A program made the translations under genes and the position numbers. Of a DNA stretch of 64,000 nt, positions 9,589-31,229 are shown one piece after another. This DNA comes from Anthoceros angustus. Taxonomy: Eukaryota > Plantae > Anthocerotophyta. Position 1 is the first letter of the stretch; every line of letters begins with the position of its first letter. Where the stretch lies: the NCBI GenBank assembly GCA_010909165.1, contig VJWM01000007.1, forward strand, positions 558,001-622,000. The letters run 5' to 3'. Under the pieces are notes generated by a model, which was given only the letters and a program-made list of their open reading frames with translations, made no database searches and was not told the origin of the DNA.

Positions 9589-10790
9589 TGCACTGAACTT
9601 CATGGTTGGCAGGGTTTTGGAATCCTTCAACGAATACTGAGCATTTTCGTTTTTCTTTAAATTGACGTGCCACATCCTCCGCAACACTAGTTTTCCTTGG
9701 CATGTCTCGACAGTTCCGCTGATAAAAAGGTCGTGTGCAGTGCCACAGTCCGGGACTGGGGCAGCCAATAGGGAGTGCTGCCATCTCCAAGGGATGAATC
9801 TTATCCCTCGCAACGTAATACCTTGTCGCTTACATCACCATCATTGCACGTCCTAGCTTCGTCTCAATACCACATAGGCCATCCTCAGGTGACAACACCC
9901 TCAACAACTTTCTTCCATGTGCCAAGCTAAATTGCTCGGCATGAGCCTACCGCATTTCTATCAAAGTTTCGAGGCAATGTGGAGTGATCCACTTCAAACC
10001 TGCCTCAGCATGACTATTGTAAGACTGATCACATTTTCTCCCAACACTTCCTTCTCACCTGTTGCTCCTTGGTGCTCATCTTTTCCGCACCCCCTGGAGA
10101 TTCTCAAGCTTCTTCAGCCACAAAGGATGGGCATGTGATTGTGACACTTCCGCGGCACACCTGAAGAGCAGCACCAGTTTGGCTCAGTTGCTATCAGGCA
10201 AGCCCACCAAAGAAGTAAAACAAGTAGATGGACCTAAGCACTCAACACAGAAAGTTAAAAGTTTCATTGCAAGTGTTACAATGCAAATCATACTTTAAAC
10301 CTGAGTCCAAATTCAGCAAACACATTTGATCTTGCTTCCCTTCTCGTGGCCTTCAATCTCTATCTGACCCAACGTCCTGTTGACATCGCACAACACGGCC
10401 TGATGAGTCAGGGTTTATCATTGTGACTGTAGCTTCTGACAACCCTTTTGGAGAGAAAAATAGCTGATGTCTTGTTGCTAATCCCACAGCCACATTCGAC
10501 CATGCTGCCACCAAACAAACACGGGGGGGTTAAAATAATCTGTCAAGAACACAAACGACAGTAATTAGGAATCAGAAAGCAGAACATCGGGAAACCTAAA
10601 ATTCCAAACCACAACCAGCAGCTGAACGTTGACAGAATCCAGCAAAGCGAAAACACAGGCAATGGTGTCTTCCATGTCGCACCACAACATTCAGAAAGGT
10701 GACCTTGACACAACGAAGGAACAAAATTAGAGATAAAAAGGAGCACGGGGCTGCCTCAAACAAAACTGCAAGACTGAACGTCGACAGAAT

Positions 10791-10880
10791 TCAGAGGTCT
10801 CCACAAATTATGGGTGTATAATGTGTTTAATGCCGTGGCAACAGAATGCGCTGAAGTTTGATCATCGCACACTTGAGACC
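10791..10880 (-). pseudogene. Diverged tandem paralog of the adjacent snoRNA (probably non-functional)
   Basis: Shares TCTCAAG..GATGAT, TGCCRCGGCATT and ACACCCATA with 10991-11070, but the D'/C'/D boxes and terminal stem are degraded. Confidence 0.6.
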
Positions 10881-10990
10881 GCAAGTGATAGCGATGGGAG
10901 ACAAGCCAAGCACACAAGACCGAGCAAGGTTCGAACAAGATCACAGACGAGTGTCCACACAATTCAGGCATCTTACAGACGTCTTACCCC

Positions 10991-11070
10991 AAGCGCTCAT
11001 ATTCTATGGGTGTGAAGTGTCTTCAATGCCGCGGCATTCAGACCGAGGAATTATTATCATCACCGCGCTT
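10991..11070 (-). ncRNA. Box C/D snoRNA with two 18S rRNA 2'-O-methylation guides
   Basis: The minus strand reads AAGCGC-G-GTGATGA(C)-TAATAATTCCTCGGT-CTGA(D')-ATGCCGCGGCAT-TGAAGA(C')-CACTTCACACCCATAGAAT-ATGA(D)-GCGCTT, with a perfect 6-bp terminal stem. The guides are complementary to the conserved plant 18S segments CGAGGAAUU and AUUCUAUGGGUG (18S sequence recalled, not searched). Confidence 0.85.
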
Positions 11071-11266
11071 GAGAAAACTAGTGTCACAGCCATGAGAGTC
11101 AAGCCATGCGCACTGGAGAAAACAAAAACACGCGACTGCGGCTGGACGGCCAGCACTTGATGTAGAGTTCAGTAACACATACCTCGAAGTCCAGGCATGC
11201 ACAAGAAAACAATCAAAACCTAAACCTGGACAGATACGGCAGTCATATCCTGACCTACCTCCGTGG

Positions 11267-11698
11267 CTACGACGCTGTCGGGCCGACAAGAACTCCTTGC
11301 GCGCCTCCCTCCTTCGGTGCAGCTGCATCAGAACTGTTGTTATCCGATGCGTCTCCTCTCCGAACCCTGATCTTGTACCTTGTCTCAAACTCCAAAAGCT
11401 CTTTCCTCTTCTTCTCGAGAGCTTCCGCGAGTTTACCAATCACTTCTTGCAATCCGTCCCCATTGTTCTGGACAGCGGGTATGACCTCTTCTACGGTTCT
11501 CTCCACCAAGACTCCGCCGATCATTCGAAAGCACTTCCTTTTGGGGTCCAGGTGCTTGATCGCGTTGATCACAAGCGTGTGCTCATTTAGCTCCAGTTCG
11601 AGTTCAGAAATCTTGGAATACAGCTGGTTGAGCTCGGAGCGCAGAAGATTCCACTTCCCGACCACCGCCTGCTCGTTCACTGCCTCCACATGTGACAT
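11267..11698 (-). CDS. PFD2: Prefoldin subunit 2 (single coding exon)
   Basis: 'NEQAVVGKWNLLRSELNQLYSKISELELELNEHTLVINAIKHLDPKRKCFRMIGGVLVERTVEEVIPAV...QGVLV'. ATG at 11698. Confidence 0.95.
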   Translation of the reverse strand: MSHVEAVNEQAVVGKWNLLRSELNQLYSKISELELELNEHTLVINAIKHLDPKRKCFRMIGGVLVERTVEEVIPAVQNNGDGLQEVIGKLAEALEKKRKELLEFETRYKIRVRRGDASDNNSSDAAAPKEGGAQGVLVGPTAS

Positions 11699-12013
11699 CT
11701 CCTCGCCGCCTTCCGCCCTGCTCGGCGCCGTTTTGCACTGAAAGGTTTGCAGGAGGCTCACTATTTAACACCCTTCTGGTAAGGGCAAACAAGGCAAACG
11801 GAGGAACCTAAACGCCGAACAGACTGCCCGTGCGAGGTTGATGGATTTTCGCACTTCCGACGCATTACAACATATTCAATGAATTTTAAACCATCTGATT
11901 TACAAAACTCGAGAAGTACCTACACGTTCAGTGTGACACGGGTTACAAAGAAGAACACATCGTAGTCCAGTAATTGATTGGTAACAAGTCCTGCGGCTAC
12001 TGGACTATCACAA

Positions 12014-14725
12014 CTACGACAGCGATTTCCCCGCCCACTCCCTGTTTCTTCGCTTCTCCTTAGCTTGCATTTTGTTAAACTTCTCCTTTCCCTTCTCCAG
12101 CAAAGGGTCGAAAAGCACATACTGATTTGGATCCTCATTTCTCGCCATTGAGTCCTGCGCAACATTTGCATTGTATGAGGTTGAACATTATAAAATGTAC
12201 ACTGAAAGTATGTACACTACACAAAAGTATTGGTTCGCATGAGGTTGAACACTCGTTCGCCACTAGGGACACAACCCAACGAGAAATCACACTTCCAGCT
12301 TCCAGTACCTTCTGCTTTGGATCCACCTCAAACTTCAGCTGGTGGTGCAGCCAATCATGCCCCCTTTCAATCTCGACTTCGTCGTTTGAACCAGGCTGCT
12401 TGACCTCACTTACGACCTTTGTCTGAAGCTTAGTTTTGAATTTTTCCAGCTTCGCTAATGTCTGTGAACGGACGGTGATGCCCATGAGGGTGATGCACTT
12501 GTGCAAATGAAACATCCCAGAAATCGAACATCTTAACTTTTAAAAAGAAACAGAATTGAGTGCTACATAGAGGTTTGTACACGTACTGCCTCCTCTTTGC
12601 CTTGGAGGGTGCGCTTCCGTTGCTTATACTTCTGGCGCTGCTGTTCGAGTGGCGTCAAAAGCTGGGAATCAACGTCGCTCTTGGAGTAGAGCTCTGCCTT
12701 TGCTTCAGAGCCTAAGCCTTTTTCCTTGATGACAAGTTTGTCCTTCTTACTTTTCTTTGCCAACAGTTCATCACCGCTACTATCCCTGTCTCTGTTAATA
12801 CAGGGGACGCGATCAGTCCCTGAACCACCAACATTGCTGAACACCATGATCAGTGGAGCTAAACCAAAAGGTCAGATGCAGACTGTACCTTTTGTCAGGC
12901 GGAAGCGGGGGTTTAATACTAGGCCGGTGTTTAAGAGTGCCTGCAACATTGTCATCGTCTGTGCCTGGGCATGGCAGCCGACCAAATGTTAGCAAGAAAC
13001 GACTCAGGATCATGAAACGTGGAACAGTTCATTTACACCAGCTCCTGCAACCTTTTGTAGTACTAGTCACTTTCGGTTCTTCAAACCGGCGCTTGCGCTC
13101 AAGGACTTGCTGCCTCATCTTCGAATCAAATGCATACTCAGACTCCTCATCCTCATTCCTACTTTCTTTCTTCCCAGCAGTCAGAGCTTGTCGCACAGAG
13201 GACTGCAGATCCTTCCTTCTTTTGGTTTCCTCAGGATCCTGTCATTGACAAACAACCAAAGACTCGTTGAAAGGACCTAAACATGGATTTGGAGAAAAAG
13301 GCAGGCCGAGCCACCATATCAGTCTGCACAGACACTTGTAGCACTGCAAATTACTTACCTTCTGCACATCTCCCTTCAGCAGCCGGGGATCATCAAGAAG
13401 ATCATGACTACTTCGGATTTTAGCCTTGTTAGTGGATAGAATTTGCTCCTCCTCTTCAGCCTCCTCGCCAAATGAGAGCAAGTTCAACTGCCTGGAGTGG
13501 CGTTAGAACAAAATCCGGGAAAACACTCACCCTAAAATCAACCTGCCCATCTAAGATACAGGTACATGTCTACTCACTTTTTCTTCGGAGCTTTTGTCAC
13601 TTTAGGTTCATTAGTCTCCTCAACATGTCCTAGTGAAGTTTCCTTCACCTGCCTTGGAACAATGTCCTCGAACGGATTCCAGAGCACCTGGATCAGATGA
13701 TCCACTGTCAAACACACTCATGACGTCAACTCTTTCAGTGGTGCAACTGTAGGCACCTGTAGTTACAGCGAACGCAGAAATGCATCAAAGCTCAAAAACC
13801 CTTCATAGAAATGCTCCTGGCTTGAAAACATTCGCTGTTCATCTGACACTGACAATTAAGTTCATGAACCCTTCAGCCACTTATCCAAGCTGGCAAGAAA
13901 CGCACCTCCACGGCAGTTATCTTGGGTGGCTCCACAGGACGATCGTCCGCATCAGTCTCCAGCTCCCCGATGCGCAATAGGTTGTAAATTGAATCACCTG
14001 TGATCTGGTGGAGTGCATAAACGCTATGTTAAAACAAAATACGCCTACATATCCAGCTGTGTCAAGCCTCTGATTGCAAATTATACCTTCCCAAAGATTG
14101 TGTTTTTCTTATCAAGCCAGTCAGTCCGATCTAAAGTGATGAAGAACTGGCTATTGTTGCTGTTGAAAGTCCCTGCATTTGCACAGGCAACCAACCCCCT
14201 ATGGTTGAACCGGAGCCTAGAATGGCACTCATTAGGGAAAGGTCCTCCATAGATGGTGTCACCACCTGCCATCAGTAATACAATCTTAGGACGAGCCATT
14301 CAATCAGAACAAACGCGCAAGCAACTGAAAATGAGCAAGTAGCAGACCTTTTCCGGTGCCGGTCGGATCCCCTCCTTGCACCATAAACGACTTGATAATC
14401 CGGTGAAACACAGTAGATTCATAGTAGCCCTCCAGACAAAGCTGTACGAAATTGCGAACCTGAGTTCCCACTCGACAGCACAGACCAACCACACGCAACG
14501 TCAGCTCTAGGGCACGGAAAATGGCAACGAGGACGATATCTCACACTTCACCAAGCCCCAACGAGACAAATGTCACGTTTCCAAGCTGACAACTCCTCAA
14601 ATTTGCAACAGACTTACTGCTTTGGGCGCCTCCTTAGGCCACAATTCAATGTCGAGTGGCCCAAGAGTAGTGTTGAGGACTACCTTGCCCTTCGTGGGTG
14701 GCTCCAACACATAAATTGAAGACAT
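12014..14725 (-). CDS. CYP57: Spliceosomal cyclophilin CYP57/CWC27, multi-exon
   Basis: '[17 protein letters not shown]...[11 protein letters not shown]', '[31 protein letters not shown]', '[14 protein letters not shown]', '[13 protein letters not shown]' and 'DWLHHQLKF'. The C-terminus is '[31 protein letters not shown]'. Confidence 0.93.
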
Positions 14726-19240: not shown

Positions 19241-20620
19241 ATGGCCAATGTGGAGCAAATGGTCGTCTACGGTGTAGCCCTTGCTACACTAAGTGTAGTT
19301 CGAGACTTGTCTTATTTACTGAATTACTTTGAGGGGAGTAGTGATGCTGCCATCACCGATTGCGGGCTATCTTTAAGATCTGTGAGCATGGATGACCAGA
19401 GACTTCTAGATGATGCTCTTGATAACACTGTTCTGTCATGTCAACAATTGGAGGCTGCTCTTGCAATTGCAGCCCGCACAGGACAATTACCAAGGGGATT
19501 TCTAACAGGCATTCAATTATCAACGTACTATGTGAAACCCCGCGTACAGGACATGTGGACTTTATACCTTCAAGCGGCACAAGAGGATCCAAAAAGGTTT
19601 TCCCGTTTCTATCGATTCCCATGGGCAACCTTTACGTACATCTGCAATCTAGTTCATGACGTTCTTGACCCGACTCCAGTTCCTGGATTTGTGAACATCC
19701 CAGGGAGGATTATCTCTGTGCAGAAACAGGTTGCCATTGCCTTAAGGAGACTGGCCACAGGTGATAGCTTTGTCTCTGTAGGTGAAAGCTTCGGAGTGGG
19801 ACAGTCAACTGCCTGCACAATTACTCACCGTTTTGTCAAAGCAATCATACAGAAGGCTAGGCATCACCTTGCCTAGCCATCAGCAGGTCAATTGGAGGAA
19901 GTGAAGGCAGGATTCTTTGAACGACATGGCTTCATGAACTATTGTGGTGCTATCGATGTGACCCATTTCCGGCTGGAACTACCTGTAGGAGAAAACCAAT
20001 GGGAGTATCGAGGAAGATACAAAGATTTCACAGTCGCAATGCAGGGTATCGTAGGCCCTAATAAGAAGTTCTTAGATGTAGTAACAGGCTAGCCAGGAGC
20101 TGCAAATGATACGAGAATTCTATACAACTCAGAGTTCTATCACCAAGTCAATGCAGGTGCATGGCTGAATGGACCATCCATGTTCGTGGATAACGAGGAA
20201 GTGCGAGAGTATATCATCGGAGATGCTGGCTACCCTTTGCTTCCATGGTTGATCATCCCCTTTCCTGGTCGAGGTTTGATAGCAAACAAAGAGTCTTTTA
20301 ACTTCAAGCTATCCTCTTCTCATATGGTCGTTGAGGACGCTTTCGAAGCACTGAAAAAGGTTTGGCGGATACTAGTTAGGAAAGTGTGGCAAGGCAACAT
20401 CAACTACTTCAATGCGTTGACTTATGCGTGTGTGTTACTGCACAACATTCGGATAGATCGTGGTGATGAGATAGATCCAAGACTGTTGGCAGGCGAGGAG
20501 GACGATGAAGAAGGTGGCATGCATCGAAACTTCATAGCAACTGGCCCCGGTAGTGCCGAAGGGCATAGGTTGAGAGACATCTTGATGCACATGTTATGGA
20601 GCAATGAGATGAACTCATGA
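19241..20620 (+). pseudogene. Harbinger DDE transposase (ALP1/HARBI1-like) with two in-frame TAG stops
   Basis: One 460-codon frame contains the HTH 'QVAIALRRLATGDSFVSVGESFGVGQST' and the catalytic 'CGAIDVTH', 'PGAANDTRI', 'IIGDAGYPL' and 'VVEDAF'. TAG at 19874 and 20090 replaces conserved Trp codons (LA[W]P, G[W]PG). Confidence 0.92.
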
Positions 20621-20679
20621 AATAGAAACCATACGTTCAATCCTTTGTTGTTGAGAAATAAATGTTGTGTAAGTTCTAC

Positions 20680-21864
20680 CTACCCTTTCTTGATATGGGC
20701 TGCCTCTATGATAGCTGAACTAAGACTTCGAATCCCAAGAGATATGTCGGTCATTGCCTGGACCACTCCACGCCCAAATTCAGAGTTAGCTTGCAATCTT
20801 TTCTCCTCGATACACTCATACACCTCAAGTTTCTTTTGCTCCATTGCTGTAATGGATGCTATCTTGTCACGCTCTAAGTCTAAGAGTTCCTTATGCCGTT
20901 GTTTCCGATGCTTCTCAGCTTCCCTCATGGCTTCCAGTTTTGCAGCATGATTCTCCTTCATCATGGGCACCAATCCAGTGATGGTGGAGTCCTTCGATGT
21001 TTTCCTCTTTTTACCTTTCCAGGTTGAAGCATGTTCTTGCTCCCCGTCGTCTCCAAATAGTTCTGCCTGCACTTGGGGGTCCAGCTCAGGGCAACACTCA
21101 GAATCTACTTGTCTGATATTACCCGAGCTCTCAGTACCACTGTTTAGTTTAGTGCTATCAAAAGTCCCATTGGCATTGACTGCCTTGTTGCAGCAGAACA
21201 CATACATGGCTTCATACACGGTCCGAAGGAAGGCTTTGGGCAGCTTTTGAGCAATTCTCTCAGCCTTCTCCATATTCCAATAGCTGCTCCATCCTGAATT
21301 GTGACCAGGTCGCTCCCAATCTTGGACTTTATTGAAGTCCGTCATGAGAGCTTCCCAGCGATCACGGCATTGCTTCGCCGTCCTGTAAACCTTATGGCTT
21401 GCACATGAAGTTGAAATTACAGCCCATCTTGTATTGGCAGGAGTCATCTTTTCTTTCATACCGCCGTCCCTGTGCTTCATAACATCCTCCTTCCGTACAG
21501 AAACCAATATGAGCAATTCAGATTCGTCCCACCTTTTCCCTGTATTATCTTCGTCAATGAGTGATGAATCACCTTGATTTGAAGCTTGAACCCTAGACCT
21601 TTTCTTACCCTCGGCACGGTTGGGATTCACAGACGGGTTCTGAAGACCTTGCCTTTCCAGCTCAGTCTGAAATTGTGGCCTCCAAGCTGCGGAATAGCCA
21701 GGACCTTGTAAGTGCGCTGCTACATTATCCCCAGTGTGGGTTTGGAGGAGCAAAGGACCTCCTCCCTCGCTCATGCTCAAACCTGGAGCTACACCATAAG
21801 ACAAATGTTGAGATTGAGACACGTTTCTGTTAGCAATGTCTTCACAATTTGTAGCATGCTTCAC
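20680..21864 (-). CDS. Harbinger-associated Myb/SANT (trihelix-like) DNA-binding protein, intact ORF
   Basis: 'KRWDESELLILVSVRK...RWAVISTSC...RTAKQCRDRWEALMTDFNKVQDWE...YWNM...LPKAF', followed by an NLS-like 'KGKKRK' and a C-terminal coiled coil. Tail-to-tail with the nuclease. Confidence 0.88.
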   Translation of the reverse strand: MKHATNCEDIANRNVSQSQHLSYGVAPGLSMSEGGGPLLLQTHTGDNVAAHLQGPGYSAAWRPQFQTELERQGLQNPSVNPNRAEGKKRSRVQASNQGDSSLIDEDNTGKRWDESELLILVSVRKEDVMKHRDGGMKEKMTPANTRWAVISTSCASHKVYRTAKQCRDRWEALMTDFNKVQDWERPGHNSGWSSYWNMEKAERIAQKLPKAFLRTVYEAMYVFCCNKAVNANGTFDSTKLNSGTESSGNIRQVDSECCPELDPQVQAELFGDDGEQEHASTWKGKKRKTSKDSTITGLVPMMKENHAAKLEAMREAEKHRKQRHKELLDLERDKIASITAMEQKKLEVYECIEEKRLQANSEFGRGVVQAMTDISLGIRSLSSAIIEAAHIKKG

Positions 21865-23260
21865 ACTTGATACCTACCAGGTATGCTTGGCACATTGAAT
21901 CCAGCCGGAGGTCTTGCTGAAGTCGATAAGCGAACAAAGAGTCCTGACAATGCAATGCACGCCTGACCTCAACGCTAGAGCGATTCATGTAAAGAGGGCA
22001 ACTTGCGGCCGGATGGAAATGGCAAAATAGCAGGCGATTCACGGTCCCATATGAAAATCAGCCTCTTGTCTTGCATGCCTAGGCTCGACTTGCACTAAAA
22101 TCACAGTTGCTTGTGAGTTGCCCGATCACTTTTGTTCTTTTTTGGCAATTACATCTTATTAACCAATACAGTTAATGGATATTGTTATACCTAATATAAA
22201 ATATTGAGTAAGTAAGGTATAGTGTCTATAATATTAAGTAAGGTATGATATCTTATACCTAATATAAAACATCGAGTAAGTAAGGTATAGTGTCTATAAC
22301 ACTAAGTAAGGTACAATGTCTATAACATCAAATTACAACACCTGCTATAATAATGTTGTAATTGGTGTAGTACAAAATATCTTACTATGTGATCAGAGCT
22401 TTTATCTCAGCTAGTTAATGAAACTAACTCTATATAATTAAACTGTTACTAGAACTCATAAAAGTTCTAAACAAAAAATGTATAGACTTTACCGATTGCA
22501 GGAGGAAGACTATTATGCACTGGCAATCAAATAATCTAATAGTTTGGTTGGGCAACTCTTAGGATTGGTGACATAACCATATCAAAGGAGATTTCTAAGT
22601 GCTGGTGCAGGGCTGTCTGGCTCTATCCCTATTAAACTACCCGGCTCTACCTCTACCTCAGTTAGACTATCCAGCTCGTCCGGCTCTGTCCGGCTCTACC
22701 CCTACCCCAATTAGACTGTCCAGCTCCGGCCCTACCCGCTACCCGGCTCACCCACTAGTGGGAGCTAGCACCATTATACCTAGTAGCATAGGGAGCCTCC
22801 TTCTAGTTGTGCTATAACATCTTATCACATTCTGCTATCGACTAGGGAGCCTAGAAGGACGGAGGTTGTGCTCCTAATATCTTATCACATTCTGTTATCG
22901 ACTCTTCCCGCTTTGGTTGGGGCACTTCATTCAGGAACCAATATTCGAAAGTGTCATGACTATAAAGCAGATCTGGACCCTAAAATTTAAATATTGCTCG
23001 AAAAAACTACGATTTTATTTTGACACTTGCTTATCGCCGTACTCCATGTGAACCCAAAACGTATGCAGGCCGCCCAGAGGGGTTGCCGCCTGTGGGATCG
23101 ACTGCAGAAACTCATCTGAAAAGTTCGTCCACTCTGCAGACGCATCGTTTAAGAAACCACGCCTGAAAAAGAGCTTGCCCTACAAAAGCAAACTCACGCA
23201 TTACCACACAGCAGTGAACCAGAAAAGATCGTCTGCTAGCGCTGCAGGCAGCATCGCTTC

Positions 23261-26200
23261 CTACTCCACGCTGCTCACCTTCACCTGTCGAGCGTCTGGT
23301 GAGTTCCAAAACTTGTACAGCAGTTCTCTGGACAGTCTCAAAGAGAATCTGTCATAGGCATCAGGCCCCTCCCAAGATCCCTTCCCGTTCATCTTGGCAT
23401 CCACCAAGTCCGTAACAAGCCTTCTCACCTGTGGATAAGGACAAATGACTGCTGATGAGATCCGCTGCTATGCAGGATGCATGCATAAAAACACCCATGC
23501 GATCTGATGAGCTACCTTCACAGGAATGAGCGACAGGCCTTCTTCAATCGCCTCCTCCAGTGCCTGAACAGTCCAGTGCCTCCTTACAGGTATTGCCAAC
23601 AGAGGCTTCCGCAAAGATTTCGCTTGGTCCATAATTGCGCGTATGGTGACAGGGGACACCGCATCAGGTACTGCCTTGCAATTATGTAAAGGGACGACAC
23701 GTCCGCTTGAAGGATCAAAAAATGTGCACAACACAACTGGAAGCTCTCTTGATGTTGAGCTGTCCACCTCGCTGTCGATGGGATCAAGCAGCACCTGCAG
23801 AAATCAGAAAGTTGAAGGACCTTACAACCTTTCCAGATTTGAATTGTAGGGACTGACAAACCAGATTGTCGAACCTTGAGTGCAAGATGAGAGGAAATAT
23901 CCCCTGCCCAATGCAGAGCATCCACTTGCACTTTTGCCCTCAAGACCCTGCTCAGATCGTCAGTCGTCATGAATGTGGGACTCTGCATCAAGTAGACAAG
24001 GTTACAGAGTCGAGAGAGAAGTCCCATCCCAACTTCGAAGAAAGTGCTCATCCCCCACTCTCCACCAACAAACACTAGCTACCTCAGAACAAGCAACAGA
24101 TTAAAGACGCTCATACCGTTATGGTGCATGATCGGGGACCTTTCAAACAACAGACATTGTAGTGGCCAAAGGGGCAGTGTCTGACAGGACAGAGGAACAA
24201 GTGATATGACATAGGATACTGCAACATGAGATATGTTTGAATACTTGATGCATCACTCTACCTGCACCGATTTCCGCAACAGGTTCCGCGCTCACGTAAA
24301 GCTCTCCTTGTGAATACCATGTAACCTTCATATAAACGGATATGGGGCACAACACACAAAAGCCTATGAGGACTTATACTTGTAACAGGCGTCTCACACT
24401 CTCACTTAGCTGATCCAGACTCCAGCCATATAGGATCTTCTCACCAGTCTTGGGATCTTGGTACATGCTCTGTCCTTGCTGACAGGCTGCATCATGGGCT
24501 TGTTCTATGTCATGTGACAAGGGTAGTTCCTCCCACCTGTCATCCATCACTTCATCCCATGGGTCAAGAAATCCTTCGCCTTCAACCCCTTTCCAACCAT
24601 TCCCACAATGTATATCATCTGCGGAAATCTTGAATTCCTTAAAGGATGTCTCTTCAGGTATCCATCTCTCCCATGGGAAGTCGGTGGGCATACATGCAGG
24701 AGTTTCATTCAGAAGTCCAACTAACCTGCAGCAGCGGAAGAGCAGAGGTGTTAGGGGCAATTGGATGTGGACCTGGCATCCCAAAGACCGCTTGAACACA
24801 CTCTGATAATTTCACACACCATTCAAAGGCATCAACAATGCGGGGGCCAGAGCGGTTGAACATCTGATTGCCGTCCACAAGAACAACCCGACCCTGCTTC
24901 ACAGCCCGCAGATTCTTCCACCACGTCTTCGTGACAACGTTCTTGAGCTCCTTCTGAAACTTGTGGCAAATACTTCAGAATTCAAAAGCACACAGAAACC
25001 AGATTGACCAATTGAACAAGTCGCCTGATATAGCACCAGTTCAGGGGTCACTGCATTACTCCACAGCTCTAACCTTGGTTGTAGGGATGTCGAGTCCACA
25101 TGGACTAACAATCACCCAATCAGGATCTGCATCGGATACAGCCTCAGGAGAGACTCGAAATGACTCTCTTGCGCTCCTGCACATTGCCCCACCCACAGTA
25201 AGCAAACGAACTAGAATCACACACACTCCCACCGTCTCTGAGATGACGCCTTCCTGATAAACCTTTCATCTACTCTAGACATTGTGAAATGTTCCCGGCA
25301 AGCCCTCTCTCACAGTCTGGAGTAATGACAGTACGTGTTACTCTCCACCCTGCAAATGAAGGACTGCACCAGCGAATGGGCATTGACTACTCACGCTTGC
25401 CCAAAGCATGTGGAAGGATTCAAGGGATGTACTCCTCCAGCCATCTCAATAAGCTGTGGAGTCCAATGACCACCACAAAAAATGGGATCCGTCCACTCCA
25501 TGAACACCACCCGGGGCCTTTCACTCATGTCTCCACCTTTGACTAGGGCTGTAGCATGTGCTATTCGTTGCTTCAACAATGCAACCACACTTTGTGACTC
25601 AGCACCCTGGCCTGCAGGGTACACCAACAACTGGATGAGGAACACAGACTGAGCCACACAGAAGCAGAAATCCATTCGGCATTGAAAGACAAATAAAAAA
25701 TACCAATGGCTTGGCCGACTCGGATGATATCTTCCAAAATGTCCTGGACACTATTTGGGTTCAAACTAAGAACTCGAGGAACAGGATTTAGCTCCCTACA
25801 CCGCAAGAGTGCTTGGGTTACTAGTTACATCCAACCGGCCTGCGAATCCTAAAATTCAGGATTCCAGCTAGACAAGCAAAATCTCACAGTACCGTGCTAT
25901 TCTCATCACGAGGCTGTGGTCAATAGCGCAGACGCTGCATAATGCTTGGGTGATAATCACATCAGGTCTCAGTGATTTCAGCAACTGCGCATCCAGAAAG
26001 TAAAGCCCTTCTCCCTTGGCCAAAGATTCAGATACCTTGCTGTCAATATCTGCAGAGGAAAATATGACCGTGCTGAAGTTCAGGGCAGGTAGAGAGGACG
26101 CCCTGCCTTCAAAGAGGTAAACTAGTCCATACCTGAAGAAGTAGTAAAGGAATATCTAGCTGCTGTGAGCGTTGGCCGATCAATGATGATCGGGGGGTAA

Positions 26201-26412
26201 TCGTCCTCGTGCCCTCTACCCACCAGTTTGCTCGCTCCATCCACGATGCAGACCATTTCCGTAGCTGCGGGGAGCAGGGACACGACTCTCATCTCTCCCG
26301 CTGCAGTAGATGAAGCCATTGCGGTGTCGTGAAGACGACCCAGCGGCTGCCGGATTGGAAGAACGGGCGAACACCGTATCCGACGATAAGCAGCTTTCAA
26401 GACGGACCGCAT
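23261..26412 (-). CDS. Multi-exon fusion protein: BtuF-like/cobalamin-binding family substrate-binding domain + DUF5522-type Cys motif + degenerate PP-loop (Dph6/AANH-like) domain
   Basis: GT-AG exons join in phase to give 'MRVVSLLPAATEM..LVGRGHEDDYP', 'PDVIITQALCSVCA', 'EWTDPIFCGGHWTPQLIEMAGG', 'PDWVIVSPCGLD', 'DGNQMFNRSGPRIVDAFEW', 'AACQQGQSMYQDPKTGYMVFT..RGTCCGNRCRHCPFGH', 'VDALHWAGDISSHLAL' and 'VVLCTFFD..IMDQAKSLRKPLLAIPV'. In-frame ATGs at 26412 and 26319; the last exon and stop (23261) are less certain. Confidence 0.85.
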
Positions 26413-27158
26413 GGACTAAATTCGGAACAATTCGATTGCAACGATTCGACCATAGCCGATGCGTGCGTGCTTACTGTATCAATTGTCCACATACAATATT
26501 GCAAATGTACAAAATAAGCCACTTTTCTGATGATCAGGAGAGCGAGGTGCCGTCTGAGCGCATGGCACGCGCAGAGGTTGAGGCTACGTCCGGCGTGGCT
26601 CGCCTGTCCAGATTAGTTTTGATTCCAGATATCTCCTGACAAGGGACACGGTAGGTTAGATCTGAACAGTAGCTGCTGGAAGATGTCGGGGCTCACCTTC
26701 ATGAGGTGGAACCTCACGTGACTCGGTAGCACTCTCCTCCCCACACAAATCATCGCCGTCTGGGAGTAATGCATCAACGCATCCGCTGCTGCTTGCCTCC
26801 TGGCATCTGTCTGCGGACAATCACAGCTACCATCAAATTTTCAGCCTCGCACCAGCTGCCGCTGCTGCCTGATCCTACCCTGGCCAAGGAAATGACCTGG
26901 AAATCGTCATGCACAGGGTACAGGACGGAGAGATGGTCTACTGCCATTTCATCCGAGTCGATGCCGCACGGGGCCGCGATTTCACAGCGCGCCTCTTCAC
27001 TCATCCTGCTCCAAACAAACGGCCCCGCTTTGCCTGCCGTCCCCGGAACGAAGGTAAAACCTATGTGCGTACGGACAACATACATAACCATATTTGCTTA
27101 CAGATAAGGCAGCGGACAGCGGTACCGACACAGGTCACAAATACTTGCAATCTTGGCG

Positions 27159-28058
27159 ATGGCGGCTGCGTTCAGCTGCCAGGCCCTGGCCGGCGCAGCG
27201 TCCTCCGCCGCGCTGCCGCCTCGGACTGCGCTCTTGGCTTCCCCTGGGGTCTGCTCCGCGCAGCACGGAAAGCTCTGGAGCAGCGTTTGCGCAGGCACAG
27301 GGAGGCGAGCCAGCGCGCTTGTGCGGGCTCACTCAGAGACAGAGGTGGCAGTGAGTCGGGCGGCGTGCCCGGCAGTGAAGCCCCAGGTTGACGCGTCCGC
27401 CTTTGCGGCGTTGGATTTGCGCGTGGGATTGATCGTGAGTCAGTTCGCCTCAACCAGCTCAGGACGCTCTGCTTGCGCTTGGCTTGTCATTGACCATGGG
27501 GCAACTGCCATCAGATAGACGCCAAGGCTGTAGAGGACGCGGCCATGAGTGCCAAGCGGGGCAAGCCAACGCAAAGCAGGACGCATCTCCAGCTTACTGT
27601 AAGTGTGCGGTATGGTTCGCAAGGCTTGGACTGGGGCAGGCAAGGCTTGGACAAGCTGCCCTACTGTGCGTTCGAATAACGGCCTTCTACGTCGCAGGTA
27701 GACATCGGGTGCGAGGTGCGGACGGTGGTGTCGGAATGCAGGTATGTCATGGATGTGGAGGACGCTGTGGGGAAGAAGGTTCTGTTCGTCGCAAATGTGC
27801 CGCCATCTGACATTCACGGCGTTCGCAGCCACGGTGTGTCTTCGCTCTCTCCTTTTCTGCTGCTACCGCCGCGGCCTGCAGAGCCACTTCGTTGCCAACT
27901 TAGCTTTTCGGGTTTGCTCTTTCTTTGTTGTGCAGGTTTCATTCTCACTGGTTACAACTACGACCCCACGCCGATGCCACGGGTTTAAGCTCATTTTACC
28001 CGGCCTGGGGAAATTACCCCCCGGTTCGCAGCTCCTTGAGGCTGCCGTGCCTTCATGA
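27159..28058 (+). CDS. Stand-alone tRNA-binding OB-fold (Trbp111/CsaA/EMAPII-like) protein with plastid-type transit peptide, copy A (4 exons; apparent 2-nt loss near 27982)
   Basis: 'FAALDLRVGLI|IDAKAV..LQLT|VDIGCEVRTVVS..VGKKVLFVANVPPSDIHGVRSHG|FIL..LPPGSQL', preceded by an Ala/Ser-rich N-terminus. Confidence 0.8.
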
Positions 28059-28719
28059 CTCCGAATGAGTAATAGGCAAATTGTAATAGGACGCCTTTCG
28101 GGAATGTCAACCGGAGAACCACATCCGGAGTCCGGACTCGTATTAGCTAACCCCTTAACGACGGGAAGTCCCGAATTTGGACTTCAGGGCACATCCGGAC
28201 TCTTATTAGCTAACCCCTTAATGATGGAAAGTCCCGAATTGGGAATGCAGGGCATTCTGCATCCAATTACGGCCGACCTAAAAATTTTGGGTGTTGTGGC
28301 TCATCTCTTCGGCATTACGCGCTCACTTCTCATCCGAAGAGCAAAAAAGTGGGACGGAACTCAGCCTTCGAAAGGATGAGACGCTGAAGGAATCACCATA
28401 GCCACTTCTTGGACACGCACCGAACCGAACCGATCTACTCAATCTCCGCAATGGCTGCCGACCGCACCGAATTGATCTACTCATGATAATAGTACAATCT
28501 TGTGTACTATATTTTCAAAGAGAGCACAAAGAGTGAAGTCTAATACAAACTCAAAACTCCTCTAATCCAACTCAAACCTCAAGCCGAATCATGCTCATCT
28601 TCTCTAAACATCGAGCTCGCAACGCGCTAGTTTGAGCTGCATACATAACCATATTTGCTTACAGATAAGGCGGCGGACAGCGGTACCGACACAGGTCACA
28701 AATACTTGCAATCTTGGCG

Positions 28720-29619
28720 ATGGCGGCTGCGTTCAGCTGCCAGGCCTGGCCGGCGCAGCGTCCTCCGCCGCGCTGCCGCCTCGGACTGCGCTCTTGGCTT
28801 CCCCTGGGGTCTGCTCCGCGCAGCACGGAAAGCTCTGGAGCAGCGTTTGCGCAGGCACAGGGAGGCGAGCCAGCGCGCTTGTGCGGGCTCACTCAGAGAC
28901 AGAGGTGGCAGTGAGTCGGGCGGCGTGCCCGGCAGTGAAGCCCCAGGTTGACGCGTCCGCCTTTGCGGCGTTGGATTTGCGCGTGGGATTGATCGTGAGT
29001 CAGTTCGCCTCAACCAGCTCAGGACGCTCTGCTTGCGCTTGGCTTGTCATTGACCATGGGGCAACTGCCATCAGATAGACGCCAAGGCTGTAGAGGACGC
29101 GGCCATGAGTGCCAAGCAGGCAAGCCAACGCAAAGCAGGACGCATCTCCAGCTTACTGTAAGTGTGCGGTATGGTTCGCAAGGCTTGGACTGGGGCAGGC
29201 AAGGCTTGGACAAGCTGCCCTACTGTGCGTTCGAATAACGGCCTTCTACGTCGCAGGTAGACATCAGGTGCGAGGTGCGGACGGTGGTGTCGGAATGCAG
29301 GTATGTCATGGATGTGGAGGACGCTGTGGGGAAGAAGGTTCTGTTCGTCGCAAATGTGCCGCCATCTGACATTCACGGCGTTCGCAGCCACGGTGTGTCT
29401 TCGCTCTCTCCTTTTCTGCTGCTACCGCCGCGGCCTGCAGAGCCACTTCGTTGCCAACTTAGCTTTTCGGGTTTGCTCTTTCTTTGTTGTGCAGGTTTCA
29501 TTCTCACTGGTTACAACTACGACCCCACGCCGATGCCACGGAGTTTTAAGCTCATTTTACCCGGCCTGGGGAAATTACCCCCCGGTTCGCAGCTCCTTGA
29601 GGCTGCCGTGCCTTCATGA
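28720..29619 (+). pseudogene. tRNA-binding OB-fold gene, tandem copy B (1-nt deletions near 28744 and 29118)
   Basis: Near-identical to copy A. The last exon is intact but exons 1 and 2 are frameshifted in homopolymer runs (real or assembly error). Confidence 0.65.
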
Positions 29620-31229
29620 CTCCGAATGAGTAATAGGCAAATTGTAATAGGACGCCTTTCGGGAATGTCAACCGGAGAACCACATCCGGAGTCCGGACTC
29701 GTATTAGCTAACCCCGACGGGAAGTCCCGAATTTGGACTTCAGGGCACATCCGGACTCTTATTAGCTAACCCCTTAATGATGGAAAGTCCCGAATTGGGA
29801 ATGCAGGGCATTCTGCATCCAATTACGGCCGACCTAAAAATTTTGGGTGTTGTGGCTCATCTCTTCGGCATTACGCGCTCACTTCTCATCCGAAGAGCAA
29901 AAAAGTGGGACGGAACTCAGCCTTCGAAAGGATGAGACGCTGAAGGAATCACCATAGCCACTTCTTGGACACGCACCGAACCGAACCGATCTACTCAATC
30001 TCCGCAATGGCTGCCGACCGCACCGAATTGATCTACTCATGATAATAGTACAATCTTGTGTACTATATTTTCAAAGAGAGCACAAAGAGTGAAGTCTAAT
30101 ACAAACTCAAAACTCCTCTAATCCAACTCAAACCTCAAGCCGAATCATGCTCATCTTCTCTAAACATCGAGCTCGCAACGCGCTAGTTTCGAGCTGCATA
30201 CATAGCACTGGATATGGAGCGGAGACGCTTCATGCCTTCTGGAAAACCTTCCCTATCAAACTTTGACTGTTGTTCATGTATATTGTTGTCTTCAAATATT
30301 GAAGTATCAATATTTGTGCACACCCTATGTTGCAAGGGCCTGGTTTCTCCAACAACTAGAGATGCTTGCCTCGCCATACTATCCTGTTGTGCCGCATGAT
30401 TTCCCATGTCCATCTCACATTGTCGAGTTGTTTAGTGAGTGAGTTTTTGTATCTAGCCTTGCTTGTAAGGCTTGTGCCAGGTCTCTCCCCATCGTGGCAA
30501 GAAGACCCTTGTTGACTTGATTGAGATGTCAATGGAGGACTGGCTATGGAGTGTTCTTCACTTGGCGGTTCAGCCCTTCAAGGTTCTCATGAAATGTATC
30601 ATCAACTCATAGTCTTCGCCATGCACGCCGACAATCTGCGCAGAGAGGTGGCTACTCTCGAACGCTGGTCGGGAGGTTATTATACACTTTTCCGAGGTCT
30701 CATGGGATTTTTGTCGCAGGCTGCAAGAATCCACAATGCTTGGTCGGCTGCCGCCGTCTCCTTAGCACAAGCTTCTACTATGTTCCACACTCTCGGTGAA
30801 CTATGAAGGAGGTAGGCATGTGTCCTTCGCTGGATATTGACTTTCAAGTGCTGGATACTGACTTTCAAAGGAAGGGGAACTCAATTAAATTCATCTCAGC
30901 CCTCTCCTTCTACCGTTCTTCAGCCTTCATCTCCTCGACTGAATCAAATACAAGCTAGCTCCCAAACTCTCAAGTTTTTTGTTCAACAGTGGAAGAATAA
31001 GGTGACTCCGCTTCAAGAGGCATCTACAAGCCAAGCAGTAACAAATGTCTTTATTGGATAGGTTGATAAAGGTTTTAAGGTTGCCTAGGCTTTGGGATGT
31101 GTCGGTAGACAACTAATAGATTCTTTCCACACCACCACTAGCATGCTGACGGTGTGGGACCCTTTTGTGAGCGGTAGGAGGAGGTCTCTTTTTGTTTGCA
31201 CGGAGATCTTTAGCCTCTGCCTTTTTTTG

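What the first reader, a model, noticed from the sequence alone, without database searches (positions are those of the whole stretch)
23261..26412. Three-domain BtuF-like + DUF5522 + pseudo-PP-loop fusion: candidate intracellular cobalamin/metal-cofactor handling system in a land plant
Seen: about a dozen GT-AG exons join in phase into one protein that the ORF track never shows whole. It has a class III substrate-binding domain (SLLPAATE, HEDDYP, TQxxCxVCA, EWxDP..GHWxP, PCG, DGNQMFNRSGPR), then Y-x-DPxTGYxVFT..RGxCCGxxCRHCPFGH, then an AANH/Dph6-like domain. Established: the first motif set is that of bacterial proteins annotated as cobalamin-binding/BtuF-like (PF01497 fold); the second is the DUF5522/C1orf53 signature; flowering plants lack B12 enzymes, while B12-associated genes have been reported in algae and hornworts. 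Inference: from memory (unchecked), these three families co-occur near bacterial B12-uptake loci, so the fusion could be a Rosetta-stone link assigning DUF5522 to corrinoid handling. No hydrophobic signal peptide, transmembrane segment or ABC permease partner is visible, which suggests an intracellular chaperone or sensor rather than an importer.
Basis: partly seen in the sequence, partly recalled or inferred. Interest (0 to 1): 0.9.

Follow-up and report, generated by a model that had tools for sequence, protein, structure and literature searches.

The report
Hornwort corrinoid-binding three-domain fusion gene
A real, expressed 13-exon gene of a hornwort-like plant joins a signal-less vitamin-B12/heme-type binding domain, a small cysteine-rich domain and a catalytically dead relative of a bacterial B12-salvage enzyme; the same fusion occurs in many B12-using algae, oomycetes and early fungi, and I found no paper on it.

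Summary
Transcript contigs from four public runs splice 12 GT-AG introns on the minus strand into one 697-codon frame (26412 to 23015).

All three domain calls are borne out:
- **Binding domain:** a class III substrate-binding domain, 45-70% identical exon by exon to bacterial Peripla_BP_2 proteins.
- **DUF5522:** 36 bits on one exon piece.
- **DUF71 (PF01902) PP-loop domain:** the PP-loop (AGDISS, not SGGKDS) and the GE.GEFH motif are both lost, as in every green-lineage homologue seen.

The fusion is not plant-specific. About 100 long homologues come from green and streptophyte algae, haptophytes, a cryptophyte, diplonemids, oomycetes and early-diverging fungi. None comes from another land plant.

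Non-green members carry the 'DUF71-B12' signature. In bacteria a DUF5522-DUF71 protein lies beside signal-less and exported binding proteins, BtuCD-type genes and CobT. A cobalamin riboswitch stood upstream in 10 of about 24 loci with enough upstream DNA.

Best reading (about 0.6): a non-catalytic intracellular corrinoid-binding chaperone or adaptor descended from a B12-salvage enzyme. Ligand binding is untested. I found no paper describing the family.

The parts
26413..26500 (-). 5' UTR. The transcript contig runs on about 219 nt beyond the stretch that was laid.
   Evidence: X1 record 3 covers 26133-26500 at record positions 220-587. An in-frame stop lies just upstream of the ATG.
26133..26412 (-). 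Exon 1. Holds the start codon and a 40-residue Arg-rich, almost acid-free N-terminal extension (possible transit peptide). The binding domain then begins (RVVSLLPAATE, GHEDDYP).
   Evidence: Matches bacterial binding proteins from residue ~38 on.
25893..26049 (-). Exon 2. Binding domain, TQALCSVCA motif.
   Evidence: 49-59% identity to bacterial proteins.
25704..25795 (-). Exon 3. Binding domain.
25395..25611 (-). Exon 4. Inter-lobe helix and second lobe, with the EWTDP..GGHWTP..AGG motif. The best-conserved exon.
   Evidence: Weak PF01497 match at profile positions 108-168.
25074..25176 (-). Exon 5. Binding domain, SPCG motif.
   Evidence: Weak PF01497 match at profile positions 177-204.
24820..24953 (-). 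Exon 6. Binding domain, DGNQMFNRSGPR motif.
   Evidence: Weak TIGR04281 and IsdE matches.
24445..24725 (-). Exon 7. Last ~21 residues of the binding domain, an acidic linker, and the start of DUF5522 (IEQAH.., Y.DPKT).
   Evidence: bacterial proteins end here. PF17653 profile positions 1-23.
24262..24325 (-). Exon 8. DUF5522 core (YMVFT..RGTCCGNRC).
   Evidence: PF17653 at 36.2 bits..
24117..24180 (-). Exon 9. End of DUF5522 (HCPFGH) and a linker.
   Evidence: The split codon between exons 8 and 9 is AGA = Arg, completing CRHC.
23875..23982 (-). Exon 10. First strand and degenerate PP-loop of the DUF71-type domain (HWAGDISS in place of FWSGGKDS).
23516..23794 (-). Exon 11. Core of the DUF71-type domain.
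   Evidence: 44.9 bits at positions 33-101 of a profile of the family's C-terminal domains. 42% identical to Spirogloea P0127 residues 485-570.
23279..23428 (-). Exon 12. A 50-residue, phase-0 segment with no counterpart in the family alignment. It is transcribed in all four runs.
23015..23179 (-). The rest of the DUF71-type domain: KLFFRRGFLND..W aligns with the family's LvFGDLHLeD..W, and GGLHTF stands where the family has GE.GEFHT. Stop codon at 23015-23017.
   Evidence: Joint 23178/23278 in all four runs. Frame. Alignment (weak score, collinear position).
22794..23014 (-). 3' UTR.
   Evidence: X1 record 1 has 385 nt on the low-coordinate side of 23278.

Best explanation
The locus encodes a soluble intracellular protein of 697 residues, cytosolic or organellar. 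Its parts are a BtuF/heme-type class III binding domain without an export signal, the invariant Cys/His-rich DUF5522 mini-domain (C-C-x3-C-x2-C plus His), and a DUF71 PP-loop domain that has lost its ATP-pyrophosphatase motifs.

It descends from a bacterial B12-salvage module: a DUF5522-DUF71 enzyme plus a binding protein. That module became one polypeptide early in eukaryotes and reached this plant vertically through streptophyte algae.

Most likely mechanism:
- The cleft between the two lobes holds a corrinoid inside the cell.
- DUF5522 supplies a metal site or a thiolate.
- The dead DUF71 domain serves as a docking or holding surface.
- The protein therefore acts as a corrinoid chaperone or adaptor between uptake and the users or remodelling enzymes, not as an importer or an enzyme.

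In lineages with an intact PP-loop the same protein is probably an ATP-dependent corrinoid-modifying enzyme.

Shown: gene model, expression, domain homology, motif loss, taxon list, bacterial operon context.
Inferred: the ligand, the metal site, the chaperone role and the targeting.
For: Gene and expression.

Binding domain:
- Exon-wise matches sum to about 310 bits against bacterial proteins.
- The Spirogloea orthologue P0127 scores 51.5 bits on PF01497.
- Its model has mean pLDDT 83.9. The best fold matches are the heme binders PhuT, RhuT, BhuT and ShuT, and BtuF. E. coli BtuF gives TM 0.85 by target.
- A family profile hits BtuF and heme binders in PDB.

DUF71 domain:
- PF01902 in oomycete (44.8 bits) and chytrid (95.6 bits) homologues.
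- A C-terminal profile hits PF0828 (3RJZ) at E 1.9e-6.
- For the Spirogloea C-terminal model, all eight Foldseek matches with E <= 0.001 are DUF71 structures.

B12 link:
- Non-green members carry GE.GEFH[TS]. This is the ENGEF/YH signature of the DUF71-B12 subgroup. In that subgroup 75 of 102 genes lie beside B12 transporter genes (PMC3541065).
- Bacterial DUF5522-DUF71 genes have a cobalamin riboswitch upstream in 10 of 35 scanned loci.
- There was none in 147 kb of stand-alone DUF5522 loci.
- One operon reads riboswitch, TonB-dependent receptor, DUF5522-DUF71, signal-less binding protein, exported binding protein, FecCD, ABC ATPase, CobT.

Distribution:
- Named homologues come from green algae, haptophytes, a cryptophyte, diplonemids, oomycetes, and chytrid, blastocladian, mucoromycete and glomeromycete fungi. 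No other embryophyte appears.
- Hornworts are the only land plants reported to keep METH, MTRR and CblB/C/D/J (PMC11439496).

Non-catalytic state: the PP-loop is degenerate in all 13 green-lineage sequences and in the window. The GE.GEFH motif is lost in the window and in Spirogloea.

Intracellular: no hydrophobic segment.
Against: - No binding or genetic data exist.
- The structural neighbours are heme binders as much as BtuF.
- The closest bacterial relatives of the binding domain are Planctomycetota proteins, about 50% identical. They are orphans. No riboswitch was found in 146 kb. No FecCD, TonB-dependent receptor or CobT was found in 717 kb. No DUF5522 was found nearby.
- The operon binding proteins are only 23-24% identical to the eukaryotic domain, and the signal-less and exported copies score the same.
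- Many bacterial DUF5522-DUF71 loci have no B12 context, for example L077 beside ergothioneine genes.
- No diatom or animal name appears among the homologues although both use B12, so the profile is imperfect.
- Loss of the catalytic motifs could mean a changed function in green lineages.
- The C-terminal exons evolve fast. A partial sample against X2 gave 15 non-synonymous to 11 synonymous differences across exons 7 and 10-13; 25 of the 26 lie in exons 10-13.
Confidence: 0.6

Rival explanations
1. The binding domain holds another iron or tetrapyrrole ligand (heme, a siderophore or a metal chelate). The protein would serve iron or heme trafficking, with DUF5522 as an Fe-S or Zn site, unrelated to B12.
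For: - The top fold matches are heme-binding PhuT, RhuT, BhuT and ShuT.
- The best PDB sequence hit is an 'iron-binding protein', 4M7O.
- The nearest bacterial relatives have no B12 context.
- Source names read 'Fe3+-hydroxamate/iron complex'.
Against: - The domain is fused to a DUF71 of the B12 subgroup signature (PMC3541065).
- Its bacterial counterparts sit behind cobalamin riboswitches with CobT.
- It is absent from land plants other than this hornwort-like genome, although all plants traffic heme and iron.
Confidence: 0.2
2. The plant protein is still an enzyme. The altered loop would bind ATP or another nucleotide differently, and the protein would modify a corrinoid (amide hydrolysis or ligation, as proposed for DUF71-B12).
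For: - W, G and S of the loop, and the Q of the QA motif, are kept.
- The fold is retained in Spirogloea.
- The gene is intact and expressed in four runs.
Against: - Four of the six PP-loop residues are changed, including the Lys and the Asp.
- Both Glu and the His of GE.GEFH are lost.
- The degenerate sequences differ from one green lineage to another. This fits relaxed constraint, not a new conserved site.
Confidence: 0.1
3. A decaying relic: a former B12-salvage gene drifting towards loss, transcribed but without function.
For: - Dead catalytic motifs.
- A lineage-specific 50-residue insertion (exon 12).
- A high share of non-synonymous differences in the C-terminal exons.
- Intron-retaining contigs.
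Against: - The 697-codon frame across 13 exons is intact, with canonical splice sites.
- The binding domain and DUF5522 keep all family-invariant residues.
- Exon 4 differs from X2 at only 5 of 210 nt.
- The same degenerate state persists across Viridiplantae and haptophytes, which implies long retention.
Confidence: 0.07
4. A paralogue of diphthine-ammonia ligase (Dph6) acting in diphthamide synthesis on EF-2, as some database names suggest.
For: UniRef and JGI names for oomycete homologues read 'diphthine--ammonia ligase'. PF01902 matches.
Against: - The family carries GE.GEFH, not the Dph6 motif EGGE/DxE (PMC3541065).
- It is fused to a small-molecule binding domain.
- The plant copy lacks the PP-loop.
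- Per the paper, Dph6 of eukaryotes is instead fused to two RidA domains.
Confidence: 0.02

Closest known systems
DUF71-B12 subgroup of the DUF71/COG2102 (PF01902) PP-loop family (de Crecy-Lagard et al. 2012, PMC3541065)
   Same: The fold, the PP-loop and the ENGE[F/Y]H-type motif match in the non-green members of the fusion family. The bacterial relatives found here sit in cobalamin-riboswitch operons with BtuCDF-type genes and CobT.
   Different: - The paper describes prokaryotic proteins. It places all eukaryotic DUF71 with Dph6 and mentions neither DUF5522 nor a fusion to a binding protein.
- The plant copy has lost both motifs.
- The biochemical activity of DUF71-B12 is still only predicted.
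BtuF, the periplasmic vitamin B12-binding protein (PDB 1N2Z, 1N4A, 5YSC)
   Same: Two-lobe class III fold with a long connecting helix. TM 0.79-0.86 by target. Shared strand motifs at the lobe edges.
   Different: - Only about 19-21% identity.
- No signal peptide, and no BtuCD partner seen.
- Extra conserved Cys and His residues (HE.D, C..C, PCG).
- B12-contact residues were not assessed.
- Heme binders match equally well.
Heme-binding class III proteins PhuT, ShuT, BhuT, RhuT and IsdE
   Same: These are the best Foldseek and profile matches.
   Different: They are exported proteins that serve ABC importers. They have no DUF5522 or DUF71 partner.
Dph6 (diphthine-ammonia ligase; PF0828 structures 3RJZ and 3RK1)
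   Same: The same PF01902 fold. These are the top structural matches to the C-terminal domain.
   Different: - A different signature motif.
- Different fusion partners (RidA domains).
- The substrate is a protein (EF-2).
CBA1, the algal cobalamin acquisition protein (PMC10828217)
   Same: Also a BtuF-like fold in eukaryotes that is linked to B12. Homologues are also reported in hornworts (PMC11439496).
   Different: - CBA1 has a signal peptide and a C-terminal membrane helix and is located in endomembranes.
- It has a different set of conserved residues.
- It is reported in about 80% of streptophytes including Arabidopsis, whereas this family was found in no other land plant.
- The two were not aligned here.
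Animal cobalamin chaperones MMACHC and MMADHC (CblC, CblD)
   Same: This is a resemblance in how it may work only: soluble intracellular B12 handlers, one of which uses a Cys thiolate on cobalt (my own knowledge; compare the reference list of PMC10828217).
   Different: Unrelated folds, and no homology is claimed.

Membership tests
Peripla_BP_2 (PF01497), class III substrate-binding fold | Sequence match to the family model or its members along the whole domain | tested here: met
   Single exons reach only E 0.05-0.2 on PF01497. Exons 1-7 nevertheless align collinearly at 45-70% identity to bacterial members. One of these scores 50.4 bits. The orthologue P0127 scores 51.5 bits.
Peripla_BP_2 (PF01497), class III substrate-binding fold | Two alpha/beta lobes joined by one long rigid helix | tested here: met
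   Tested on the orthologue P0127, not on the window protein. The model has a helix at residues 165-190 between two beta/alpha lobes, and TM 0.74-0.86 to solved members.
Peripla_BP_2 (PF01497), class III substrate-binding fold | Export signal (signal peptide or lipobox) and a cognate FecCD/ABC importer | tested here: not met
   No hydrophobic N-terminus. The highest 19-residue hydropathy (1.67) lies in a core strand. No permease lies next to the gene. The rest of the genome was not searched.
BtuF (cobalamin-specific binding protein) | Corrinoid bound in the inter-lobe cleft by the known aromatic and acidic contact residues | not tested
   Only fold similarity was measured. Contact residues were not mapped, and the tools gave no access to model coordinates.
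DUF5522 (PF17653) | Match above the gathering score, and the Y.DP.TG..V.T..CCG..CRHCP motif | tested here: met
   36.2 bits against a cut-off of 25 on the exon-8 piece, plus profile positions 1-23 on exon 7. All family-invariant residues are present.
DUF71 / Diphthami_syn_2 (PF01902), PP-loop ATP pyrophosphatase | Homology of the domain (sequence or fold) | tested here: met
   - No Pfam hit on the window exons.
- Exon 11 scores 44.9 bits on the family C-terminal profile.
- That family has PF01902 hits.
- It matches 3RJZ at E 1.9e-6.
- The Spirogloea model matches DUF71 structures and no other fold at E <= 0.001.
DUF71 / Diphthami_syn_2 (PF01902), PP-loop ATP pyrophosphatase | PP-loop SGGxDS | tested here: not met
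   The window has AGDISS. All 13 green-lineage homologues are also degenerate. Oomycetes, diplonemids and bacteria keep SGGKDS.
DUF71-B12 subgroup | ENGE[F/Y]H motif in place of the Dph6 motif EGGE/DxE | tested here: not met
   The family consensus is GE.GEFH[TS] (met in the non-green members). The window has GGLHTF and Spirogloea has GGDGTFF at that place. The window copy is a degenerate descendant, not a functional member.
DUF71-B12 subgroup | Genomic association with B12 transport or salvage genes | tested here: met
   Tested on the bacterial DUF5522-DUF71 relatives. A riboswitch lies upstream in 10 loci, with a full operon in L126. The test does not apply to a eukaryotic gene.
CBA1 | Signal peptide, C-terminal membrane helix and the CBA1 conserved residues | tested here: not met
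   Neither a signal peptide nor a membrane helix is present. Features are taken from PMC10828217.

The most novel reading that the evidence does not exclude
This family would be a missing intracellular step of eukaryotic vitamin-B12 metabolism. Where its PP-loop is intact it would be an enzyme that repairs or remodels corrinoids. In green algae, haptophytes and hornworts it would be a non-catalytic corrinoid chaperone. DUF5522 would be a new metal or cobalt-thiolate module. Its retention in hornworts alone among land plants would reflect their use of corrinoids, possibly pseudocobalamin from cyanobacterial symbionts.
Probability: 0.25. Interest if true: 0.85.

Novelty: new variant of a known kind. 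Interest (0 to 1): 0.7.

Why it matters
Known eukaryotic B12 handling outside animals rests on a few proteins:
- CBA1 for uptake;
- COBT, COBS and COBC for remodelling;
- Cbl-type chaperones by homology.

The papers I read (PMC10828217, PMC11439496 and the 2026 preprint 10.64898/2026.08.07.738727) name no BtuF-DUF71 protein. How corrinoids are held, repaired or passed on inside algal and hornwort cells is open.

This gene gives a concrete, widely conserved candidate with a clear bacterial ancestry in riboswitch-controlled B12 operons. It gives DUF5522 its first functional context. It also offers a natural contrast between enzyme-competent versions (oomycetes, diplonemids, bacteria) and pseudo-enzyme versions (green lineage, haptophytes).

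The candidate can be tested with existing Chlamydomonas B12 bioassays and with Anthoceros transformation.

If the ligand proves to be heme or iron, the result is still a new class of cytosolic binding-protein fusion in eukaryotes.

Tried and rejected
- **Joined protein.** Every search used single exons by reference or database homologues. In scripts, exon fragments were added to alignments separately and were shown side by side for display only. The window protein itself therefore has no Pfam scan, no fold and no tree position of its own.
- **Exon 11 alone.**
  - The 1.84-billion-protein representative library gave one spurious hit, a repetitive PP-binding carrier protein.
  - The ESM Atlas gave nothing.
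  - PDB gave nothing.
  - Its true relatives score about 50 bits, too low for that database size.
- **NCBIfam on exons.** Only weak class III hints.
- **First homologue search.** The search with a Phycisphaerales binding protein was swamped by close bacterial relatives. A long open frame was then used to pass the length filter.
- **Stand-alone DUF5522 genes.** Their contexts were uninformative.
- **Other loci.** The P0166 contig and the three-domain metagenome loci gave no useful neighbours.
- **Rfam on the gene region.** Nothing.
- **Complex prediction.** The job pairing the bacterial DUF5522-DUF71 protein with its neighbour binding protein was not folded, by a rule of the tool.
- **Papers.** 'DUF5522' gave 0 papers. 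Pfam-name combinations gave nothing relevant.
- **Rejected:** CBA1 identity (different topology), Dph6 function (wrong signature motif), and two separate genes (the transcript chain is continuous).
Full report
**Gene model**

The feature lies on the minus strand. A run search found one public run (X1) holding 56% of the sampled words of 23100-26500, and many runs of relatives holding about 12%. I laid X1, X2, X6 and X7 on that stretch (3401 letters, inside the operators' limit). The contigs skip 12 stretches. After the allowed small shifts, each stretch starts with CT and ends with AC on the plus strand, which is GT..AG on the minus strand. Introns are 80-218 nt.

The 13 exons are listed under 'parts'. 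Their lengths keep one frame from the ATG at 26412 to a stop at 23015-23017, 697 codons in all. In X1, one contig covers exons 1-8. Another joins exons 8 and 9. A third covers exons 9-13; its depth accounts exactly for the first nine bases of exon 9 in the depth table. The message is therefore continuous, and the refuting condition 'transcripts end before 24520' is not met.

All four runs splice that intron out, which adds a 54-codon exon 13. Two contigs retain intron 8 or intron 9, a minor point.

Exons were searched one by one by reference. Whole-protein questions were answered with database homologues.

**Binding domain**

- Single exons are too short for Pfam. PF01497 appears only at E 0.05-0.2, though at successive profile positions.
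- A scan of 185,579 prokaryotic genomes with exon 4 gave 53 loci, mostly Phycisphaerales and other Planctomycetota.
- Exon-wise BLASTP shows exons 1 (from residue ~38) to 6, and the first ~21 residues of exon 7, aligned in order to these 320-350-residue proteins. Identity is 45-70% and the summed score about 310 bits. The bacterial proteins end where the match ends.
- One of them scores 50.4 bits on PF01497.
- These bacterial genes are orphans. No cobalamin riboswitch was found in 146 kb. No DUF5522 motif was found. No FecCD, TonB-dependent receptor or CobT was found in 717 kb. In L011 the neighbours are secretion, methyltransferase and RNase genes.

**The eukaryotic family**

I used a long open frame from L027 so that the length filter admitted 580-1844-residue proteins. 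That search returned 77 long proteins, nearly all eukaryotic and carrying PF01497 plus PF17653, some also PF01902. Pfam coordinates give the order binding domain, DUF5522, PF01902, for example in Aphanomyces at 86-270, 331-378 and 421-611. A chytrid homologue scores 95.6 bits on PF01902.

The window's exons match Spirogloea muscicola P0127 best. Exons 1-11 are collinear, at 55-76% identity in the binding domain and 42% in exon 11. Klebsormidium comes next.

A search with P0127 gave 111 proteins:
- three Spirogloea copies and Klebsormidium;
- volvocine, trebouxiophyte and prasinophyte algae;
- haptophytes, a cryptophyte, diplonemids and oomycetes;
- chytrid, blastocladian, Endogone and glomeromycete fungi.

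No other embryophyte, Dikarya or animal name appears, and no diatom name either.

On a quick tree of the binding domain, Spirogloea and Klebsormidium group with the chlorophytes, which fits vertical descent. The Planctomycetota clade nests among the eukaryotes with weak backbone support.

Other notes of this scan call the genome 'probably hornwort'. My data show only that it is a streptophyte.

**Third domain**

In the family alignment, exon 10 sits on the PP-loop. The consensus is FWSGGKDS and the window has HWAGDISS. The loop is intact in oomycetes, diplonemids, many unnamed sequences and the bacterial proteins. It is degenerate in all 13 green-lineage sequences and in four haptophyte-type sequences, each in its own way.

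Exon 11 scores 44.9 bits on a profile of the family's C-terminal domains. Exon 13 begins at the family's LvFGDLHLeD..W block and ends where the family has GE.GEFH[TS]. The window reads GGLHTF there and Spirogloea reads GGDGTFF. These last placements are collinear but not significant on their own. Exon 12 has no counterpart in the family.

The C-terminal family profile matches the archaeal DUF71 structure 3RJZ over its whole length at E 1.9e-6. An AlphaFold model of the Spirogloea C-terminal domain has pLDDT 81. Its eight matches at E <= 0.001 are all DUF71 structures (3RJZ, 3RK0, 3RK1, 2D13), at TM about 0.45.

One refinement applies: GE.GEFH is the signature that de Crecy-Lagard et al. give for the DUF71-B12 subgroup (ENGEF/YH), as opposed to the Dph6 motif EGGE/DxE (PMC3541065).

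**The link to B12**

That paper reports 75 of 102 prokaryotic DUF71-B12 genes next to B12 transporter genes. I tested the link independently, and tested it for DUF5522.

A metagenome scan with a DUF5522 alignment gave 80 loci:
- about 46 encode one protein of 275-300 residues, with DUF5522 at the N-terminus followed by a DUF71 domain with SGGKDS;
- 4 encode the three-domain form;
- about 28 encode a stand-alone DUF5522.

Rfam found a cobalamin riboswitch (64-85 bits) on the same strand, 2.1-5 kb upstream, in 10 of the 35 two-domain loci scanned. That is 10 of about 24 loci with enough upstream DNA. It found none in 147 kb around stand-alone DUF5522 genes.

In L126 the tightly packed order is:
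1. riboswitch;
2. TonB-dependent receptor;
3. DUF5522-DUF71;
4. a binding protein starting at its first strand, with no signal peptide;
5. a second binding protein with a hydrophobic N-terminus;
6. FecCD permease;
7. ABC ATPase;
8. CobT.

The eukaryotic protein is thus a Rosetta-stone fusion of parts that are neighbours in bacterial B12 operons.

Caveats:
- The operon binding proteins are only 23-24% identical to the eukaryotic domain, and both copies score alike.
- Other two-domain loci have no B12 context.

**Folds and ligand class**

The P0127 model (pLDDT 83.9, DUF5522 region about 90) matches heme binders and BtuF about equally. E. coli BtuF gives TM 0.85 by target. The profile search of PDB agrees. 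The fold therefore says 'tetrapyrrole-type class III protein', not 'B12'.

One bacterial member of the same clade is fused to a homocysteine S-methyltransferase domain. This hints at methylcobalamin, but it is ambiguous.

Family-invariant residues include E-W..P and G-H-W, P-C-G and D-G in the binding domain, and C-C-x3-C-R-H-C in DUF5522. All are kept in the window. The cysteine spacing suggests a metal site. That is inference only.

**Location**

No 19-residue window is hydrophobic enough for a membrane segment, apart from a core strand of the fold. The first 40 residues are Arg-rich with two acidic residues. They lie upstream of the point where bacterial proteins start. I infer a soluble protein, possibly with a transit peptide.

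**Selection**

Between the window and X2, exon 4 differs at 5 of 210 nt and exon 11 at 21 of 279 nt. A partial list of differences in exons 7 and 10-13 gives 11 synonymous and 15 non-synonymous changes; all but one lie in exons 10-13. The C-terminal part is loosely constrained, but the frame is intact.

**Literature**

[quoted passage not shown] CBA1 is a different BtuF-like protein, with a signal peptide and a membrane helix (PMC10828217). The 2026 preprint on algal uptake and remodelling names CBA1, COBT, COBS and COBC only. Searches for DUF5522 or for the Pfam-name combinations found nothing on this fusion.

Two unchecked notes of this scan report other B12-type genes in the same genome: a CobB amidase fused to a BtuF-like domain, and an ABCD4 transporter carrying a CblD domain.

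**Verdict**

The most likely function is non-catalytic intracellular corrinoid handling, at about 0.6. The main rival is heme or iron handling, at about 0.2.

The family is a new eukaryotic variant of the predicted DUF71-B12 salvage system, and the plant copy is a pseudo-enzyme form of it.

Noticed in passing
L001-L053 (Planctomycetota loci); tree: The stand-alone Planctomycetota binding proteins are about 50% identical to the eukaryotic domain. They form one clade that nests among the eukaryotic sequences, with weak backbone support. A transfer between eukaryotes and Planctomycetota is possible, direction unknown.
   Followed up: partly
L137:3860-5623 (protein P0166): A bacterial protein joins a signal-less binding domain of this clade to a homocysteine S-methyltransferase domain (PF02574). 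It could be an unusual corrinoid-dependent methionine synthase.
   Followed up: partly
Protein P0124 (741 aa, ENA): A homologue with permuted order: DUF71, then the binding domain, then two DUF5522 copies.
   Followed up: no
L138:1-22085 (Phytophthora ramorum): The three-domain gene (10001-12085) lies inside a cluster of several ABC-transporter gene copies. Two database proteins (P0185, P0197) merge it with them. This was not seen in Saprolegnia.
   Followed up: partly
L077:3265-7447 and L080: A bacterial DUF5522-DUF71 gene lies divergent from the ergothioneine genes EgtB and EgtD and is followed by a glutathione S-transferase. There is no riboswitch, so some family members may act outside B12 metabolism.
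   Followed up: no
window 19241-21864: A PIF/Harbinger-type transposon remnant just downstream of the gene. It has HTH_Tnp_4 and DDE_Tnp_4 pieces on the plus strand and a Myb/SANT-like ORF on the minus strand.
   Followed up: partly
window about 27090-28600 and 28620-30100: A tandem duplicate of a plus-strand gene upstream of the finding. The ORFs are near-identical, for example 27153-27518 and 28632-29078.
   Followed up: no
window 24154-24291 and 23954-24145: Contigs that retain intron 8 (X1) or intron 9 (X2) exist beside the spliced forms.
   Followed up: no
L054:10001-11368 and many 380-450-residue database proteins: A two-domain form (binding domain plus DUF5522, no DUF71) is common in metagenomes. 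In L054 it lies on a contig with eukaryote-type neighbours (UBX, W2). These may be real shorter forms or gene calls cut short at introns.
   Followed up: partly
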